From: Octopus sinensis
Lineage: Eukaryota
Assembly (NCBI RefSeq): GCF_006345805.1
Contig: NC_042998.1
Location: forward strand, 7,564,001-7,628,000
Reading direction: 5' to 3'
Length of the DNA stretch: 64,000 nt
The notes under the pieces were generated by a model, which did no database searches, was not told the DNA's origin, and was given only the letters and a program-made list of their open reading frames with translations. Every line of letters begins with the position of its first letter. Within the stretch, counting starts at the first letter, position 1. A program made the translations under genes and the position numbers. This document shows, in pieces, positions 6,558-53,914 of this stretch.

Positions 6558-6945
6558 ACTGACTCTCTCTCTTTACTCTTTTACTTGTTTCAGTCATTTG
6601 ACTGCGGCCATGCTGGAGCACCGCTTTTAGTCGAGCAAATCGACCTCGAGACTTATTCTTTGTAAGCCCAGTACTTATTCTATCGGTCTCTTTTTGCCGA
6701 ACCGCTAAGTGATGGGGACGTAAACACACCAGCATCGGTTGTCAAGCAATGCTAGGGGGACAAACACAGACACACACACATATATATATATATATACATA
6801 TATACGACAGGCTTCTTTCAGTTTCCGCCTACCAAATCCACTCACAAGGCATTGGTCGGCCCGAGGCTATAGTAGAAGACACTTGCCCAAGATGCCACGC
6901 TGTGGGACTGAACCCGGAACCATGTGGCTGGTTAGCAAGCTACTT
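6558..6945 (-). mobile_element. SINE family A host copy, body and B-box part (interrupted by the ORF1-element array)
   Basis: Near-consensus family A sequence. On the minus strand it resumes with AAGTAGCTTGCTAACCAG-CCACATGGTTCCGGGTTCAGTCCC (B box). Its missing A-box part is at 13507-13548. Confidence 0.9.
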
Positions 6946-8982
6946 TATTTTAATAATTTGCCACTAGGGCAGCACACAGAGTAGCTACGGGCTGGACAAG
7001 GACATTAATGGATGATGGTGGTGGTTGATGAAGATGGTGATGGGAGAAGTCAGAAAGCGCCCGCCGACTTTTGCTTCTCTAAAACAATGCTCTTTTTTTT
7101 CAATAATTTACAAAATTTCAAAAAATTTTCACAAAACTTTCAATTTACAATTTACACTTTTAAAAGTCTCTTCAGAGGCAATAAACCTCTGTCACAATGT
7201 AACACAATTACAATTTTACGTTACCTGACCGATGAACTCTCTTGCTTTAATGACGCAATCGTCCATCGTCAGGCTTCCGCATACAGGTATGACTTGCAAG
7301 AGATCCTCCGGGAAAGAATTCTCGATCCTGCACATATCATTTTCGAGTAGGACCTCCGCAGCCAGCTGCGAAGGCCACTCGGGATACTCCATGCAGGACC
7401 GAAGTCCCTCCCATTCGTTTCTCTTCCTCCTCTTACGTATTTCATTTTCTATAGTGCCTCCTTTATGGAAGAGGACTACATAAAATTTCTCCGGCATCAC
7501 AATCGCCGGAGGACACCTGGGAGACGCCCTCTGAGTGTTACAGTCCGCTGGTGGCGTCCCGTTCCTCTTTTTCTTTTTACGCTGGGCCTCGGGAGGTTGA
7601 GGTTCCGGTGCTATACGCACCGGGTCCTCTTTTTCTTCCGCAGCCTCCGGTTCCTTTTGTGGGTCGCCATTGCTCCCCACTCTTCTTTTTCTTTTGGAGG
7701 AGGATTTTTCCCCCTCCTCAATTTGTTTCTCTCCCTCCATTGGTGGGGCAGGGAGAGGCTCTGATATTAACTTCTCCAGGATCCTACTCTGGTTCCTGGG
7801 GCAGTTTTTCTTAATGTGGCCGGTCTCCGAACACAGGTGACACTTGGGGGCGCGTCCCTCAAGCATCACCGGATACTTGGACCCGGCCATCTTCAGGAAG
7901 TCCGGCAAAACCAGACTCTTGGCCGACTGGGTCCACAGAGTCAAAGTAGCCTTTCCTCCTTCCCAGTTAGCCGCAGGCTGCATTCTCACGTTTAGGATCT
8001 TGGCGCTACCACCACTCAGACCCCGGCGGATGGAATCTTCCACCCACTCGGGCTCAAAGCCGGGCGGCAGGCCGCAGACCCATAAACGTATCAATTTTTC
8101 CCCCTTATAGCTTGGGAGAAACAGAATCTCTTCGCCCTCAATGGGCTTACTCGCGAAATCGCAAGCTGCTTTAGGAGAGTCAAACAGCAACCAAATTGTT
8201 GCGTATTTGGCTCCCCGTTGAATATGTTTAACGGCTGGCATATAGTCTGCCAGCTCGTTCATAATTGTGTCTTTCGGAAAGACCATTATGGTGTCGAGAG
8301 ACTTCGAATATGTCCTTAGCACCACTGTCTTTTCCTCAAGTTCGTTCAAATATTTTTTGGGAGGTGTTAATTCCCACACAGTGAAATTCCTTGCCATAAC
8401 GTAAGAAAAACGTAAGAAAAACAGTTCAAAATGTTACAAAATAAATTGGACACAGAAAGGAGAAGGAAAAAAGCAACAGAAGGGAAGAAATAAAATTAAA
8501 ATGGCAGTTCAAAGAAAGTTTTTTACAAATGAATGATAGACAGAGAAAGAGAGTTCAAATTCAGACAAAGGAATTAATTTTTCTTTTTTTTTTTTTTTTT
8601 TTTGTTCACTTTTTCGGCCAAAAATTGTATTCCAGGCCAAATACACTGTTGGTGAAACACCTTGGTAAATAATCCTTGGTAAATCCGTAGATAACACAAC
8701 GACAATTTCAAAAATAATTTTTGTAGACGGACTACGCCGCCTCAAAAACACAATTTTCTTCACACCCGACAACAGGCAGAAAAATTATATCCGGAGCAAA
8801 GTGGAGCCTTATTATCTGCTAAAAAATATTTAATGCTAAAATACATTAATGCAAGTAATAAAACTTCACTTCGCTCGCAAAAATACAAAATTCCTACCTT
8901 TAGTCGAGTCGAAAGTTCAATAGTTCACGTTGAAACAACGTGGCATTCGGAGCAGCAAAATAACATGTCTGAACACTTCAGA
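6946..8982 (-). mobile_element. ORF1-only (HAL1-like) non-LTR retroelement, unit 1, 2037 bp
   Basis: One 200-bp-type 5' monomer, an A-run, an intact 393-aa ORF and an ~270-bp 3' UTR ending AAAATAAA. Flanked by target copies at 6928-6945 and 8983-8999. No RT or endonuclease ORF. Confidence 0.75.
7216..8397 (-). CDS. L1/Tx1-type ORF1p-like nucleic-acid-binding protein with one CCHC zinc knuckle (393 aa, intact)
   Basis: CHLCSETGHIKKNC fits C-x2-C-x4-H-x4-C. It is preceded by a LWVCGLPP...MLEGRAPK segment resembling RRM-type ORF1 of L1/Tx1 elements, and followed by basic KRKRR and RKKKKR stretches. Family assignment is by motif recognition only. Confidence 0.75.
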   Translation of the reverse strand: MARNFTVWELTPPKKYLNELEEKTVVLRTYSKSLDTIMVFPKDTIMNELADYMPAVKHIQRGAKYATIWLLFDSPKAACDFASKPIEGEEILFLPSYKGEKLIRLWVCGLPPGFEPEWVEDSIRRGLSGGSAKILNVRMQPAANWEGGKATLTLWTQSAKSLVLPDFLKMAGSKYPVMLEGRAPKCHLCSETGHIKKNCPRNQSRILEKLISEPLPAPPMEGEKQIEEGEKSSSKRKRRVGSNGDPQKEPEAAEEKEDPVRIAPEPQPPEAQRKKKKRNGTPPADCNTQRASPRCPPAIVMPEKFYVVLFHKGGTIENEIRKRRKRNEWEGLRSCMEYPEWPSQLAAEVLLENDMCRIENSFPEDLLQVIPVCGSLTMDDCVIKAREFIGQVT

Positions 8983-9296
8983 GGTTAGCAAAGCTACTTT
9001 ATTTCATTTAATTTGCCACTAGGGCATCACACAGAGGTAGCAGTAGCTCCGGGCTGGACACAGACATTAATGGATGATGGTGGTGGATGAAGATGGTGAT
9101 GGGAGAAGTCAGAAAGCGCCCGTCGACTTTTGCTTCTCTAAAACAATGTTCTTTTTTCAATAATTTTACAGAGTTCAAAAATTCAAAAAATTCAAAAAAT
9201 TCAAAAAATTTCGAAAAATTACAAAATGTTCACATTACATATTTTAGAGGAGGCAATGAACCTCCTCTTCCATATGTTACAAGGATGTTACATCGC

Positions 9297-10504
9297 CTAA
9301 GTGACCCGGCCGACCATTGCTCTTGCCTCATTGAGGCAATACTCGTTGGTCAGGCCGGAGTCCAGTGGTATGGTCTGGAAAGAGTCCGCCGGGTAGGAAC
9401 TCACGATCCCGTGTAGATCAACCCTTCCCACGACCCCCGCAGCTAACTGCGAAGGCCACTCGGGGTTTTCCACACAAGACCGGATTACCTCCCAATGTCC
9501 TCTCTTTCTCACTTTTCTCACGGCGTCTTCCACCTTTTTTCCCTTGAAAAAGAGGAGCACAAAATCCTCCACAAACAGTCCCTCAGGCGGCACACCCGCC
9601 TGAGAGGACCGGAGATACTCGGGAACCGCCGTCTGCGTGTAGCAATCCGCCGGCGGGGCTCTGTTTCTCTTTTTTCTTCTTTTCTTCTGGCCCTGGGCCA
9701 CGGGAGTCTGAGGTTCCGGAGCTGTGCGCATCGGGTTCTCCTCTCCCGGAGCTTTCGGGTCCTTTGGTGGGTCGCCATTGCTCCCCACCTTTCTCTTTCT
9801 TTTGGAGGAGGATTTTTCCCCCTCCTCACTTTGTTTCTCTCCCTCCACTGGTGGGGCAGGGAGAGGCTCTGATATCAGCCTCTCCAGGATCCTACTCTGG
9901 TCCCTGGGGCAGCTCTTCTTGATATGGCCGGTCTCCGAACACAGGTGACACTTGGGGGCGCGTCCCTCAAGCATCACCGGATACTTGGACCCGGCCATCT
10001 TCAAGAAGTCTGGCAAAACCAGACTCTTGGCCGACTGAGTCCACAGAGTCAAAGTGGCCTTTGATCCTTCCCAGTTAGCCGCAGGCTGCATTTTGACGTT
10101 TAGGATCTTTGCGTCCCTGTCACCCAGACCCCGGCGGATAGAGTCTTCTATCCACTCGGGCTCAAAGCCGGGCGGCAGGCCACAGACCCATAAACGTAAC
10201 AATTTTTCCCCTTGTAACTGGGGAGAAACAGAATCTCATCGCCCTCAATGGGCTGGCTTGCAAATTTGCAAGCTGCTTCAGCGGAGTCAAATAGCAACCA
10301 TACCGTTGCGTATTTGACTCCCCGTTGAATATGTTTAACGGCTGGCATATAGTCTGCCAGCTCGTTCACAATGGTGTCTCTCGGAAAAACCATTATGGTG
10401 TCGAGTGACTTTGAATATGTCCTCAGCACCACGGTCTTTTCCTCGAGTTCGTGCAAATATTTTTTGGGAGGTGTTAATTCCCACACAGTGAAATTCTTTG
10501 CCAT
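9297..10504 (-). pseudogene. ORF1-like gene of unit 2, split by a 1-bp deletion into 10148-10504 and 9297-10202
   Basis: Minus strand reads AAGGGGAAAAATTG (G4) versus AAGGGGGAAAAATTG (G5) in unit 1. Both halves are otherwise open; CCHC is CHLCSETGHIKKSC. It may be functional if frameshifted or if the deletion is an assembly error. Confidence 0.65.
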
Positions 10505-10827
10505 AACGTAAAATACAACAGTTCAAAATGATAAACTAAAATTAGCCACAGAAAGGAGAATGAAAAAATGCAACAGAAGGGAAGAAATAAAATTAAAAAT
10601 GGCAGTTCAAAAAAGTTTTTACAAATAAATAATAGACAGAGAAAGAGAGTTCAATTCAGACAAAGGAATTCAGTTCTTTTTTTTTTTTTTTTCCACTTCG
10701 GCCAAAAATTGTAATCCAGGCCAAATGCACTTGGTAAAACCCTTGGTAAATAATCCTTGGTAATCCATGGACAACACAACGACAATTTCAACAATAATTT
10801 TTTCAGACGGACTATGCCGCTTCAAAA

Positions 10828-11224
10828 ATACAATTTCTTTTTACTCGACACAGGCAGAAAAATTATATCCGGAGCAAAGTGGAGCCCTATTATCTGCTAA
10901 AAAATATTAAATGCTAAAATACATTCATGCAAGTAATAAAACTTCACTTCGCTCGCAAAAATACAAAATTCCTACCTTTAGTCGATTCGAAAGTTCAATA
11001 TTTCACGTTGAAACAACGCGACATCAATACAATTTTCTTTCCACTCGACACAGGCAGAAAAATTACATCTGGAGCAGAGTGGAGCCTTATTATCTGCTAA
11101 AAAATATTTAATGCTAAAAAACATTAATGCAAGCAATAAAACTTCACTAAACTCCCAAAAATACAAAGTTCCTACCTTTAATCGAGACGAAAGTTCAACA
11201 ATTCACGTTGAAACAACGCGACAT
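10828..11224 (-). repeat. Two tandem ~200-bp monomers in the unit 2 5' region
   Basis: CAGGCAGAAA at 10851 and 11051 gives a period of exactly 200. Confidence 0.9.
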
Positions 11225-11556
11225 TTGCCGGAGCAAAAAACAACACGTCTGTCTGGTAAGGAGCTACTTTATTTCATTTAATTTGCCAAAAGGGCAGTAC
11301 ACAGATAGTAGCTACGGGCTGGACATAGACATTAATGAATGATGGTGATGGAATGAAGATGGTGATGGGAGAAGACGAAAGCGCCCGCCGACCCCCGCTT
11401 CTCTAAAACAATGTTCTTTTTTCAATAATTTACAAAATTTCAAAATTTCACAAAAATACAAAAATTTTCACAAAAATTCCAAATTTTACAAATCACAATT
11501 TCAAAAGTTTTTCCAGAGGCAATAAACCTCCATCACAATATAACACAAATACGGGT

Positions 11557-12755
11557 TCACGTTACCCGACCGATGAACGCTCTTGCTTTATTGACGCAAT
11601 CGTTCGTCGTCAGGCACCCGCATACAGGTATAATTTGATAGGAGTCCTCCGGGAAAGACTTCACGAACCTGCACCGATCGTCATGGAGTAGGACCTCCGC
11701 AGCCAGCTGCGAAGGCCACTCGGGACACTCCATGCAGGACCGAAGTCCCTCCCATTGGTTTCTCTTCCTCATTTTACCTATTTCATCTTCTATTGTTCCT
11801 CCTTTGTAGAAGAGGACTACATAATATTTCTCCGGCCACACAACCACAAACGGCGGAGGAGACATTGGAGACGCCGTCTGCGTGTTACAATCCGCTGGCG
11901 GCGTTCCGTTTCTCTTCTTTCTTTTTTTCTTTTTAGCGTGGGCCACGGGAGGTTGAGGTTCCGGTGTTGCACACGCCGGATCCACTCTTTCTCCCGTAGC
12001 TTCCTGGTCTTTTAGTGGGTCACCATTGTTCCCCACTTTTCGTTTTCTCGTTGAGGAAGTCACCGCTTCCTCGTTCTGTTTCTCTCCCTCTATTGGTGGA
12101 GCAGGGAGAGGCTCCGATATCAACTTCTCCAGGATCATACTCTGGTTCCTGGGGCAGCTCTTCTTGATGTGGCCGGTCTCCGAACACAGGTGACACCTGG
12201 GGGCGCGTCCCTCAAGCATCACCGGATACTTGGACCCGGCCATCTTCAAGAAGTCTGGCAAAACCAGACTCTTGGCCGACTGGGTCCACAGAGTCAAAGT
12301 AGCCTTTCCTCCTTCCCAGTTAGCCGCAGGCTGCATTTTCACATTCAGGATCTTGGCGCTACCACCACTCAGACCCCGGCGGATGGAATCTTCCACCCAT
12401 TCGGGCTCAAAGCCGGGCGGCAGGCCACAGACCCATAAACGTAACAATTTTTCCCCTTGTAACTGGGGAGAAACAGAATCTCATCGCCCTCAATGGGCTG
12501 GCTTGCAAATTTGCAAGCTGCTTCAGCGGAGTCAAATAGCAACCATACCGTTGCGTATTTGACTCCCCGTTGAATATGTTTAACGGCTGGCATATAGTCT
12601 GCCAGCTCGTTCACAATGGTGTCTCTCGGAAAAACCATTATGGTGTCGAGTGACTTCGAATATGTCCTCAACACCACGGTCTTTTCCTCGAGTTCGTGCA
12701 AATATTTTTTGGGAGGTGTTAATTCCCACACAGTGAAATTCTTTGCCTTTGCCAT
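11557..12755 (-). pseudogene. ORF1-like gene of unit 3, split by the same 1-bp deletion into 12369-12755 and 11557-12447
   Basis: Same G4-A5 run at 12448-12456; CCHC CHLCSETGHIKKSC; a 6-bp in-frame duplication at the start (MAKAKNF). Confidence 0.65.
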
Positions 12756-13082
12756 AATGTAAAATACAACAGTTCAAAATGATAAACTAAAATTAGCAAC
12801 AGAAAGGAGAATGAAAAAATGCAACAGAAGGGAAGAAATAAAATTAAAAATGGCAGTTCAAAAAAGTTTTTACAAATAAATAATAGACAGAGAAAGAGAG
12901 TTCAATTCAGACAAAGGAATTCAGTTCTTTTTTTTTTTTTTTCCACTTCTTCGGCCAAAAATTGTAATCCAGGCCAAATGCACTGTTGGTAAAACCCTTG
13001 GTAAATAATCCTTGGTAATCCGTGGACAACACAACGACAATTTCAACAATAATTTTTTCAGACGGACTATGCCGCTTCAAAA

Positions 13083-13478
13083 ATGCAATTTCTTTTCACT
13101 CGACACAGGCAGAAAAATTATATCTGGAGCAAAGTGGAGCCCTATTATCTGCTAAAAAATATTAAATGCTAAAAAACATTCATGCAAGTAATAAAACTTC
13201 ACTTCGCCCGCAAAAATACAAAATTCCTACCTTTAGTCGAGACGAAAGTTCAATATTTCACGTTGAAACAACGCGACATCAATACAATTTTCTTTCCACT
13301 CGACACAGGCAGAAAAATTATATCTGGAGCAAAGTGGAGCCTTATTATCTGCTAAAAAATATTTAATGCTAAAAAACATTAATGCAAGTAATAAAACTTC
13401 ACTTCGCTCACAAAAATACAAAATTCCTACCTTTAGTCGAGTCGAAAGTTCAACAATTCACGTTCAAACACGTGGCAT
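13083..13478 (-). repeat. Two tandem ~200-bp monomers in the unit 3 5' region
   Basis: CAGGCAGAAA at 13106 and 13306, period 200. Confidence 0.9.
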
Positions 13479-13506
13479 TTGCCGGAGCAAAAAACAACAC
13501 GTCTGT

Positions 13507-13548
13507 CTGGTAAGCAAGCTACTTACCACACAGCCACTCCTGCGCCTA
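13507..13548 (-). mobile_element. SINE family A host copy, 5' head with A box plus right-hand TSD
   Basis: Minus strand TAGGCGCAGGAGTGGCTGTGTGGT-AAGTAGCTTGCTTACCAG. Joining it to 6927 and below restores a complete SINE head. Confidence 0.9.
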
Positions 13549-13709: not shown

Positions 13710-13858
13710 TAGGCGTAGGAGTGGCTGTGTGGTAAACCACATGGTTCCGGGTTCAGTCCCACTGTGTGGCAGCTTGGGCAAGTGTCTTCTCCTATAGCTT
13801 CGCGCCAACCAAAGCCTTGTGAGTGGATTTGGCAGACGGAAACTGAAAGAAGCCCGTC

Positions 13859-13914
<56 letters not shown>

Positions 13915-14140
13915 GTGTGTGTATATGTTTGTCTGTGTTTGTCCCCCCCAACATCCCTTGACAACCGATGCTGGTGTGTTTATGACCCCGTAACTTAGCA
14001 GTTCGGCAAAAAGAGACCGATAGAATAAGTACTAGGCTTACAAAAAATAAGTCCTGGGGGGGGGGCGATTTGCTCGACCAAAGGTGGTGCTCCAGCATGG
14101 CCACAGTGAAATGACTGAAACAAGTAAAAGAGTAAAAGAC
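13710..14140 (+). mobile_element. SINE family A, full length, with a 15-bp deletion in the head
   Basis: TAGGCGTAGGAGTGGCTGTGTGGTAA^ACCACATGGTTCCGGGTTCAGTCCC, an internal (TA)n and tail CAAGTAAAAGAGTAAAAG. Confidence 0.9.
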
Positions 14141-14312
14141 TATAAAATAAGTATCAATCCAATTCGTAGTCAAACCATCTGACTGCAAATCCAACCGTGT
14201 TACTTTCTGTCCATCATTCAATCTGCTAATCCCTTGTCCCACTCAAGCTATCTATCTGCCCTGAGAAACGAGCCGTGTTTGTGCGTGTGTGTATGTGTAT
14301 TCATTGATACCT

Positions 14313-20668: not shown

Positions 20669-21868
20669 ATTCTAATACAATACACGTCTGTATGCAATAC
20701 ACGTCTATATACAATACACATATACGTTTGTATATATTCACGTATGTAAATGTATATGCATAATGTGTGTGTGAGTCTATGCGCGCATGCACATACACAT
20801 ATATATTTACATGCATCTTAATACCAAGATCTAAATTTTCATTTACCTTGGGGTTACACGAGCCGTAGACGCGCTAATTTTGGATATGTTTGCAATAGTG
20901 GCCTTTGCATTTCCGTTCAGTGGAATAACTGAAACGCTCGTATGGGAAAGTAAAAGCAGTGCTCTTACCACAGCAAAGTCACGACTGACTCTCACATCTG
21001 AAAGTGTCGCAATTTAAATAGCAATATAATTTAGTGTTTATTTCAGTCACAGAACTGCAAGTATTCTACTCTCTTCTATCACAGTTTTATTATAAAATTT
21101 TAGTCAGTTAAGGAATGTTTTTAATGAAATTTTTACCTAAGAGAGTCAAGACTATTGAAAAGGTTGCAAGACGCAACGAAAATTTTAGGATAATAAAAAT
21201 AAGAAATAAGTGGCAATTTCGCCGGTGAGTGTGTTACATTATAAGGCACAAAAAGAAAATGACTCTCCCCAGACACAACAGAATATGCTTCAACACACGA
21301 AGTCATATAAAGAATTTTGCAAACCAAATCCAAAAACGAAATATTTTTGCGTAAGATTTATGATGAAAACCTGTGGTCATAAAATTTAGTATCTCTCTCT
21401 CTCTCTCATCTTTTTATGACAAAGACACTTTTATAGAAGGGATAGCGATATGTCCCAAAAACTGAAGACAATAGTGTTATGTAGTCTGAGAGTCACTTTT
21501 AAATTTTTCCATCGTATAAAACGAAAGAATCATTTAGGGAAAAACCTTTATACCACAAAGAATATTGCTGCCTGTTGATGTCAATGAATGTCTTCTCCAA
21601 ATAAACGTTTCTAAAACTGTTAAACTTTATTACAACTGGCTGAATAAAATTCTGCCAAGTAATAGATATAACCTATTGCCTAACGAAAACAAAATCGAAT
21701 TGCTTTAAATCAAAGATCCCCAACCGTTTTTGCACCATAGGCCGATTTCTCCCAAGACATTTTTCCCCCGCAGATTGGGGATTACACATATAACACAAAG
21801 TGCGTAATATTTAATTTGATTATTACATATGTAATACAAATATAATGCAAAATCACCCTTCAGACAGT

Positions 21869-53910: not shown

Positions 53911-53914
53911 TAAT

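What the first reader, a model, noticed from the sequence alone, without database searches (positions are those of the whole stretch)
6928..13524. ORF1-only retroelement that appears to target the tRNA-derived head of a SINE, stacked three times at one site
Seen: a family A SINE is split between its A box (13525-13548) and B box (about 6904-6914). The 18-mer CTGGT(T/A)AGCAAGCTACTT is duplicated at 6928-6945 and 13507-13524. Between them lie three head-to-tail 2.0-2.25-kb units, each with a 5' region, one CCHC ORF1-like gene, a 3' UTR ending in AATAAA, and no RT. Established: TSDs of this length indicate target-primed reverse transcription; Tx1-clade LINEs are often sequence-specific for tRNA/snRNA/5S genes or other transposons; HAL1 elements are ORF1-only L1 derivatives. 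Inference: this is a non-autonomous, target-specific Tx1-like family that parasitises and inactivates SINEs by separating their Pol III boxes by 6.6 kb. The target is a near-palindrome (TGGTAAG-TAGCTTG-CTTACCA) in the D-arm/anticodon region and resembles tRNA-Gly(TCC), so the autonomous partner may target real tRNA genes. I know of no description of this combination in cephalopods but cannot search.
Basis: partly seen in the sequence, partly recalled or inferred. Interest (0 to 1): 0.88.

Follow-up and report, generated by a model that had tools for sequence, protein, structure and literature searches.

The report
ORF1-only retroelement stacked in SINE head
Three copies of a short retroelement that encodes only the LINE 'first protein' sit head-to-tail at one 18-bp spot in the tRNA-like head of an octopus SINE, and a distant relative in Octopus sinensis sits at the same spot in another SINE, so this looks like a site-specific parasite of another mobile element: a new target and format for a known kind of behaviour.

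Summary
The 18-mer is duplicated at 6928-6945 and 13507-13524. Removing what lies between the two copies, together with one copy, rebuilds an intact SINE head. Three 2.0-2.25 kb units lie between them, all on the minus strand and in the SINE's own orientation. Each unit has a 5' UTR built of 200-bp monomers, one ORF and a 3' UTR, with no RT, LTRs or TIRs. The ORF is intact only in unit C (393 aa). The protein is homologous (hhalign 96-97%) to ORF1s that sit directly upstream of APE-RT-zf-RVT ORF2s, so it is a LINE ORF1. The units are mosaics of diverged lineages, with dN/dS about 0.2, which favours independent insertions over local duplication. The only close relative found (O. sinensis LOC115225585, 59% identity) abuts a different SINE head at the same position. 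Best reading: a non-autonomous, HAL1-like, target-specific LINE derivative mobilised in trans. Tx1 membership, the partner element, genome-wide specificity and the tRNA-Gly claim are untested or unsupported. It is a new variant of a known kind, of moderate interest.

The parts
13525..13548 (-). 5' part of the split SINE head, with the A box TGGCTGTGTGG at 13526-13536
   Evidence: Sequence. Aligns with the intact SINE heads.
13507..13524 (-). Target copy 1 (AAGTAGCTTGCTTACCAG on the minus strand); left TSD of the array and of unit A
11270..13506 (-). Unit A (2237 bp). The 5' UTR has two 200-bp monomers (13082-13470). The ORF is broken by a 1-nt frameshift at the G-run 12453-12456, leaving pieces 12369-12755 and 11557-12447. 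The 3' UTR is 11270-11556.
11253..11269 (-). Target copy 2 (AAGTAGCTCCTTACCAG), a degenerate 17-mer between units A and B
9000..11252 (-). Unit B (2253 bp). It has two 200-bp monomers (10827-11224) and the same frameshift as A (10208-11). ORF pieces are 10148-10504 and 9297-10202. The C-terminal third belongs to a diverged lineage, 50-70% nt identity to A and C.
8983..8999 (-). Target copy 3 (AAGTAGCTTTGCTAACC) between units B and C
8971..8982 (-). 12 extra nucleotides (TCTGAAGTGTTC) at the 5' junction of unit C
   Evidence: Alignment.
6946..8970 (-). Unit C (2025 bp). It has one 200-bp monomer, an intact ORF1 at 7216-8397 (393 aa, with the CCHC knuckle at aa 186-199) and a 3' UTR at 6946-7215.
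6928..6945 (-). Target copy 4 (AAGTAGCTTGCTAACCAG); right TSD of the array and of unit C
6572..6927 (-). Rest of the split SINE: B box GGTTCAGTCCC at 6904-6914, then the body, a (TA)n tract and the tail

Best explanation
This is a family of non-autonomous, ORF1-only derivatives of an APE-type LINE of the L1/Tx1 kind. The format is the same as HAL1.

The elements insert by target-primed reverse transcription, in one orientation, at one 18-bp site. That site is the anticodon-arm-like hairpin GGTAAG-TAGCTTG-CTTACC in the tRNA-like head of an abundant octopus SINE.

Staggered nicks 18 bp apart duplicate the site. On the bottom strand the nick falls at ..CTACTT^ACC... On the top strand it falls after ..CTTACCAG. 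Every insertion therefore leaves two usable targets, and later insertions land in them. This built a head-to-tail stack of three units separated by target copies.

The endonuclease and RT, which carry the site specificity, must come in trans from an autonomous partner that was not found. L1-Tx1 LINEs are recently active in Octopus. The conserved last ~150 nt of the 3' UTR is the likely handle for that partner. After insertion, gene conversion probably homogenised the 5' halves of units A and B.

Shown here: the TSD and empty site, the ORF1-only structure, ORF1 homology to LINE ORF1s, mosaic divergence under purifying selection, and the same junction at a second locus. Inferred: TPRT, the partner, nick positions, order of insertions and gene conversion.
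For: - The 18-mer is duplicated, and joining the flanks rebuilds the empty site.
- There are four target copies for three units. Variants pair up around single units: copies 1 and 2 share CTTACCAG around unit A, and copies 3 and 4 share CTAACC around unit C. Intact SINEs have T at that position.
- Unit C has 12 filler nt at its 5' junction, which is typical of non-LTR 5' joins.
- The units have no ORF2, LTRs or TIRs.
- The ORF profile matches P0052 (97%, E 1e-10), which lies 10 nt upstream of an APE ORF. It also matches the ORF1 of L003 (96%), which is followed by APE, RVT_1 and zf-RVT. The best PDB match for that APE is the human L1 endonuclease, E 4e-10.
- 72 distant relatives were found. 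All five that carry an organism name are from octopods.
- Segment-wise identity gives three different groupings. A and B are 95-100% identical in the 5' half. A and C are 78-93% identical in the C-terminal third, where B is only 50-70% identical to either. B and C are 92% identical in the 3' tail.
- dN/dS between units is 0.18-0.19 over the first 200 codons, with dS 0.21-0.28 there and 0.24-0.42 over the whole ORF. The differences therefore arose in functional lineages, not in place.
- O. sinensis LOC115225585 is 59% identical in protein and has an unrelated 5' UTR. It starts right after ..GGCTGTGTGGTAAGTAGCTTGCTTCC of a different SINE copy, in the same orientation.
- Literature: Tx1-clade LINEs target small-RNA genes and other transposons (PMC4494074, PMC3706591). 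13 L1-Tx1 families are recently active in O. vulgaris (PMC13282606). Type I ORF1p (RRM plus CCHC) is the Tx1 and plant-L1 type (PMC5203782). HAL1 is an ORF1-only L1 derivative (PMC5753468).
Against: - Only two loci could be examined, so the genome-wide distribution of flanks is unknown.
- The L001 copy is truncated at its 3' end at about aa 319. No SINE remainder follows within 10 kb, so only its 5' junction supports specificity.
- No autonomous partner or RT was found, so the clade is unassigned.
- Units A and B share a frameshift and a near-identical 5' half. Local duplication or conversion could also produce that.
- The RRM folds are not demonstrated. Pfam finds only a sub-threshold zf-CCHC match, and the AF2 models have pLDDT 38-47.
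- Assembly error in a repeat array cannot be excluded.
Confidence: 0.6

Rival explanations
1. One or two chance insertions into a SINE were followed by unequal crossing-over or segmental duplication between the TSDs. On this view the stack says nothing about target specificity.
For: Units A and B are 95-100% identical over about 1.1 kb, including the 200-bp monomer duplication and the same 1-nt frameshift. Unequal exchange between TSDs would also leave one 18-mer between units.
Against: B differs from A and C by 30-50% in the C-terminal third. The three segments give three different groupings. dN/dS is about 0.2 rather than about 1. An independent O. sinensis copy has the same SINE-head junction. 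Simple unequal exchange of a B-C pair would put the hybrid unit in the middle, but here it is at the end.
Confidence: 0.15
2. The SINE-head fragment is part of the element rather than its target. It would be a captured or 5'-transduced tRNA-like head, like the U1/U2 heads on some Tx1-Mar LINEs. The shared junction would then reflect common descent, not targeting.
For: In L001 the head is followed by the element with no SINE remainder downstream. Tx1 families with snRNA-derived heads are documented (PMC4494074).
Against: In the window only the first unit is preceded by the head. Units B and C are preceded by the 17-mer alone. The downstream flank runs seamlessly into the B box, body and tail of a complete SINE. 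The L001 copy is truncated at its 3' end, which explains the missing remainder.
Confidence: 0.08
3. This is a tandemly duplicated host zinc-knuckle gene family, or gag-only remnants of an LTR element, that happens to lie inside a SINE.
For: RefSeq annotates the O. sinensis relative as an ordinary uncharacterised protein. A CCHC knuckle is also found in Gag proteins.
Against: There are no LTRs or TIRs. The array has a precise 18-bp TSD and a clean empty site. Two of the three copies are frameshifted. The protein is homologous to ORF1s next to APE-RT ORF2s.
Confidence: 0.03

Closest known systems
Target-specific Tx1-clade LINEs: Tx1L in Tx1D, Keno in U2 snRNA genes, Mutsu in 5S rDNA, Dewa in the tRNA-Leu spacer, Tx1-Mar in Mariner-N4_AMi (PMC4494074, PMC3706591)
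   Same: Insertion is orientation-specific and repeated at one sequence inside a multicopy RNA-gene-like unit or another transposon. The ORF1 carries a CCHC knuckle. Relatives of this ORF1 sit upstream of an APE-RT-zf-RVT ORF2. L1-Tx1 LINEs are recently active in Octopus (PMC13282606).
   Different: These units have no ORF2, so RT-based membership cannot be tested. The target is the anticodon-arm-like hairpin of a SINE head. I found no report of that target in four of the eight full-text searches. Specificity is shown here at two loci only.
HAL1 (half-L1), ORF1-only non-autonomous derivatives of mammalian L1 (PMC5753468)
   Same: The elements keep a 5' UTR, an ORF1 under purifying selection and a 3' UTR. 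They lack ORF2 and presumably depend on a partner's ORF2 protein.
   Different: The ORF1 type differs: a CCHC knuckle with no Transposase_22 domain. The host is a cephalopod. Insertion appears site-specific, whereas HAL1 is dispersed. The parent LINE is unknown.
Dada DNA transposons, which target tRNA and snRNA genes (PMC3706591, PMC8869645)
   Same: Both use multicopy small-RNA-like sequences as a safe landing site.
   Different: Dada are DNA transposons that encode a transposase. Here there are no TIRs, an 18-bp TSD and a LINE ORF1.
SINEU and Tx1 families with snRNA-derived heads (PMC4494074)
   Same: Both show an intimate physical link between a Tx1-type element and a small-RNA-derived head. 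The same target is shared by autonomous and non-autonomous elements.
   Different: In SINEU the head is part of the mobile unit. Here the head is split and stays behind as flank.

Membership tests
Non-LTR (LINE-derived) retroelement inserted by TPRT | Target-site duplication and a reconstructable empty site | tested here: met
   The TSD is 18 bp, against 0.01 expected by chance. Joining the flanks rebuilds an intact SINE head.
Non-LTR (LINE-derived) retroelement inserted by TPRT | ORF homologous to a LINE ORF1 | tested here: met
   hhalign gives 97% (E 1e-10) to P0052, which lies upstream of an APE ORF. It gives 96% to the ORF1 of L003, which lies upstream of APE-RVT_1-zf-RVT.
Non-LTR (LINE-derived) retroelement inserted by TPRT | Own ORF2 with endonuclease and reverse transcriptase (autonomy) | tested here: not met
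   No ORF2 is present in any of the three units. The ORF1 stop is followed by a 270-300-nt UTR and then the target. The elements are therefore non-autonomous.
Non-LTR (LINE-derived) retroelement inserted by TPRT | Absence of LTRs and TIRs | tested here: met
   The repeat finder on unit C finds no terminal direct or inverted repeats.
Tx1 clade of LINEs | RT domain groups with Tx1 in a phylogeny | not testable with these tools
   The element has no RT. No octopus genome search was available to find the partner, and no reference RT set was at hand.
Tx1 clade of LINEs | Type I ORF1p: RRM domain(s) plus a CCHC knuckle | tested here: inconclusive
   The CCHC knuckle is present. The Pfam zf-CCHC match has E 0.0011 and 19.4 bits, below the 20.8-bit cut-off, but C189 and C199 are invariant and C186 and H194 nearly invariant in 23 relatives. 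There is no Pfam RRM or DUF4283 hit. AF2 pLDDT is 38-47, and Foldseek gives only weak ferredoxin-like matches.
Tx1 clade of LINEs | Sequence-specific insertion | tested here: inconclusive
   Four insertions share one site and orientation: three diverged units here and one in O. sinensis. No genome-wide survey was possible.
HAL1-like ORF1-only derivatives | Encodes ORF1p only, with the ORF kept under selection | tested here: met
   Each unit has a single ORF. dN/dS between units is 0.18-0.36, and one copy is intact.
HAL1-like ORF1-only derivatives | Derived from an identifiable autonomous LINE that shares its ends | not testable with these tools
   No full-length relative of this family could be retrieved. 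Only one close homologue exists in the protein database.
tRNA-derived SINE (the target) | Head recognisable as a tRNA, with A and B boxes | tested here: inconclusive
   A-box-like and B-box-like motifs are present. ARAGORN at default settings and Rfam find no tRNA. At a relaxed threshold one copy scores as tRNA-Ser(GCT)-like, not Gly(TCC).
Dada DNA transposons | TIRs and a transposase | tested here: not met
   There are no TIRs, and the only ORF is a LINE ORF1. The 18-bp TSD is what TPRT leaves.

The most novel reading that the evidence does not exclude
A lineage of ORF1-only (HAL1-format) retroelements in octopods has kept, across subfamilies that are only 59% identical in protein, a strict specificity for the anticodon-arm-like hairpin of an abundant SINE. 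The SINE population would then serve as a genome-wide safe harbour, and the TSD would regenerate the target so that elements pile up in stacks. The specificity would be borrowed from an undescribed Tx1-type partner. The poly(A) signal sits at the very end of the element (AATAA|A), so transcripts would carry target sequence that could guide precise priming.
Probability: 0.45. Interest if true: 0.55.

Novelty: new variant of a known kind. Interest (0 to 1): 0.45.

Why it matters
If confirmed genome-wide, this would add two things. It would add a SINE head to the list of targets used by site-specific LINE-type elements. It would also be a non-mammalian, site-specific counterpart of HAL1.

It would be a clean case of one non-autonomous retroelement living inside another. 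It would give a defined 18-bp hairpin target for studying how an APE-type endonuclease reads sequence or structure.

It also bears on repeat annotation in cephalopod genomes. SINEs make up about 12% of the O. vulgaris genome (PMC13282606), and most families there are unclassified. Such nested stacks could be mis-annotated as genes, as happened for LOC115225585.

Tried and rejected
- Pfam on the ORF and on 23 relatives found only zf-CCHC, with no RRM or DUF4283.
- A PDB sequence search found only knuckle matches at E >= 0.1.
- Two AlphaFold runs gave poor models, pLDDT 38 and 47. The Foldseek search had no match at E <= 0.001 and I treat it as uninformative.
- Exact-protein look-ups of the window's ORFs found nothing, so the source assembly and further copies could not be fetched.
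- A word-indexed homologue search with a 23-sequence alignment returned only 2 proteins.
- I spent the third and last homologue search on the APE fragment of L002. It returned only unnamed ENA proteins. As a result, the octopod relatives found could not be looked up in their genomes.
- Metagenome scans found no hit for an ORF 32-mer. A junction 21-mer gave one chance hit in a contig that reads as bacterial (L004).
- L002 and L003 share too little DNA to compare their flanks.
- The SINE and the element share no 3' tail.
- Folding the three aligned 3' UTRs showed no covariation.
- A 10-nt match to the element's 5' end near 20690 is a local tandem repeat, so I dismissed it.
- The tRNA-Gly(TCC) resemblance is not supported.


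Full report
**Observation**

The 18-mer CTGGT(T/A)AGCAAGCTACTT occurs exactly twice in the 64-kb window, at 6928-6945 and 13507-13524, against 0.01 expected. Everything of interest reads on the minus strand.

Read in that direction, a SINE head runs TAGGCGCAGGAGTGGCTGTGTGGT (A box at 13526-13536), followed by AAGTAGCTTGCTTACCAG. Then come 6.56 kb of inserted DNA, then AAGTAGCTTGCTAACCAG, and then CCACATGGTTCCGGGTTCAGTCCC (B box at 6904-6914) and the rest of the SINE down to about 6572.

Joining the flanks with a single 18-mer gives a head colinear with the uninterrupted SINE copies at 53912(-) and 54739(-). The 18-mer is therefore native SINE sequence, and the empty site can be reconstructed.

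The 18-mer covers the near-palindrome GGTAAG-TAGCTTG-CTTACC, which occupies the position of an anticodon arm.

**Anatomy of the insert**

An alignment of the insert against itself gives three head-to-tail units:
- A = 11270-13506
- B = 9000-11252
- C = 6946-8970

AAGTAGCTCCTTACCAG lies at 11253-11269 and AAGTAGCTTTGCTAACC at 8983-8999. There are thus four target copies for three units.

Unit C also has 12 extra nucleotides (8971-8982) at its 5' join.

Each unit contains:
- A 5' UTR that starts ACAGACGTGTTG. It contains a 200-bp monomer, two copies in A and B and one in C.
- One ORF.
- A 270-300-nt 3' UTR ending ..GGCAAATTA..AAATA. This abuts the target so that AATAA|A forms a poly(A) signal across the junction.

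There is no poly(A) tail, ORF2, LTR or TIR. The ORF is intact only in C (7216-8397, 393 aa). A and B share a G5-to-G4 frameshift. No other copy lies in the window.

**What the protein is**

Pfam sees only a zinc knuckle just below threshold. The protein database holds one close homologue, O. sinensis LOC115225585, at 59% identity.

A full HMMER scan of 1.8 billion representatives found 72 distant relatives matching residues ~10-200 plus the knuckle. All five that carry an organism name are from octopods: O. bimaculoides, O. sinensis, O. vulgaris and Argonauta hians.

One relative, P0052, lies 10 nt upstream of an ORF with an APE endonuclease domain on its contig. The best solved-structure match for that domain is the human L1 endonuclease. 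A degenerate relative of that element (L003) reads ORF1(CCHC), APE, RVT_1, zf-RVT.

Profile-profile comparison links the window ORF to both ORF1s at 96-97% probability over ~190-210 columns. The ORF is therefore a LINE ORF1 of the L1/Tx1 sort.

The two RRM-like domains that I read from the sequence pattern are not demonstrated. There are no Pfam RRM hits, the AlphaFold models are poor, and Foldseek is uninformative.

**Independent insertions or local duplication?**

Segment-wise identity is reticulate:
- A and B are 95-100% identical from the 5' UTR to mid-ORF.
- In the C-terminal third, A groups with C (78-93%), while B is only 50-70% identical to either.
- In the last ~150 nt, B and C are the closest pair (92%).

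Between units, dN/dS is 0.18-0.19 over the first 200 codons, with dS 0.21-0.28 there and 0.24-0.42 over the whole ORF. Copies decaying in place would give a ratio of about 1. The differences therefore arose in lineages where ORF1 was under selection.

The target variants also pair up around single units. Copies 1 and 2 share CTTACCAG around A. Copies 3 and 4 share CTAACC around C. Intact SINEs have T at that position.

The simplest history is that B inserted first, and A and C then inserted into the two TSD copies that B created. Gene conversion later homogenised the 5' halves of A and B, including the frameshift. That order, and the conversion, are inference.

**A second locus**

The O. sinensis homologue lies on CM016886.1 (L001). 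Its ORF is 70-72% identical in DNA to the window units, and its 5' UTR is unrelated.

About 510 bp upstream of its ATG, the sequence reads ..ATTATAGGCTGAGGCATGGCTGTGTGGTAAGTAGCTTGCTTCC|TGTGCATG... This is the start of a different SINE copy, in the same orientation, ending within a nucleotide or two of the same position.

SINEs make up about 12% of the O. vulgaris genome (PMC13282606). By my rough estimate, a random hit at that nucleotide and orientation has odds of about one in a thousand.

The copy is truncated at about aa 319, and no SINE remainder follows. Only the 5' junction counts as evidence.

**Mechanism**

I read this as target-primed reverse transcription with nicks staggered by 18 bp. 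The reaction would be carried out by a partner LINE's APE endonuclease and RT, since the element encodes neither.

The site specificity would then belong to the partner. The conserved 3' tail would be what the partner recognises. Because each insertion duplicates the target, stacks form naturally.

The terminal AATAA|A suggests that transcripts end in the flanking target and could anneal to the nicked site. This is speculation by analogy with other site-specific LINEs.

Separating the A and B boxes must disable that SINE copy. That is a consequence of the insertion, not a demonstrated function.

**Comparison with known elements, and novelty**

Tx1-clade LINEs are known to target U2, U5 and 5S genes, a tRNA-Leu spacer, microsatellites and other transposons (PMC4494074, PMC3706591). 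L1-Tx1 families are recently active in O. vulgaris (PMC13282606). Type I ORF1p, with RRM and CCHC, is typical of Tx1 and plant L1 (PMC5203782). HAL1 is the known ORF1-only format (PMC5753468).

What is new here is the combination of an ORF1-only element that appears site-specific with a SINE head as its target. I found no report of this in the text searches.

Tx1 membership itself cannot be tested without an RT. ARAGORN and Rfam call no tRNA, and a relaxed ARAGORN run calls one copy Ser(GCT)-like.

**Limits**

No octopus genome could be searched, so specificity rests on four insertions at two loci. The partner is unknown. Misassembly of the array cannot be excluded.

I rate this a new variant of a known kind, of moderate interest.

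Noticed in passing
window 13719-14150 (+): A SINE copy lies 170 bp from the split head and is inverted relative to it. It lacks exactly the 15 nt AGTAGCTTGCTTACC, which is the hairpin that serves as the element's target. This could be a hairpin deletion, a SINE subfamily, or a footprint.
   Followed up: no
window 13082-13470 and 10827-11224 (units A and B); single copy in unit C at about 8747-8946: The 5' UTR is built from a 200-bp monomer, duplicated in A and B and single in C. This recalls the monomeric promoter repeats of mouse L1.
   Followed up: partly
window about 8584-8603, 10677-10692 and 12928-12942: An internal A15-A20 run, read on the sense strand, sits inside the 5' UTR about 190 nt upstream of the ATG. 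Its length varies between units. It could mark a composite origin for the 5' region.
   Followed up: no
window 6946-7095, 9000-9150 and 11270-11420: The last ~150 nt of the 3' UTR is 86-92% conserved among all three units, although the adjacent ORF end of unit B is only 50-70% identical to A and C. It is a candidate recognition module for the partner RT. Three sequences give no covariation signal.
   Followed up: partly
window 6946-6951 and the equivalent unit ends: The AATAAA hexamer is formed across the element/TSD junction (AATAA|A). Cleavage and polyadenylation of a transcript would therefore fall in the flanking target sequence.
   Followed up: no
L001 10001-10846 (O. sinensis CM016886.1): RefSeq gene LOC115225585 ('uncharacterized protein') is the ORF1 of a 3'-truncated copy of this element family. 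A premature stop ends the annotated ORF, but the ORF1 homology continues to about 10983, where the copy is truncated. It is probably a transposon fragment annotated as a gene.
   Followed up: partly
L002 and L003 (ENA metagenome contigs): A high-copy LINE family from an unidentified eukaryote in ENA assemblies has an 800-860-aa ORF1 homologous to the octopus ORF1. It is followed by an APE-RT-zf-RVT ORF2. 562 APE hits were found, on contigs up to 0.9 Mb.
   Followed up: partly
window 6780-6806, 13858-13915 and many other sites: (TA)n and (TG)n microsatellites lie inside the SINE bodies and make up much of the window's simple-repeat content.
   Followed up: no
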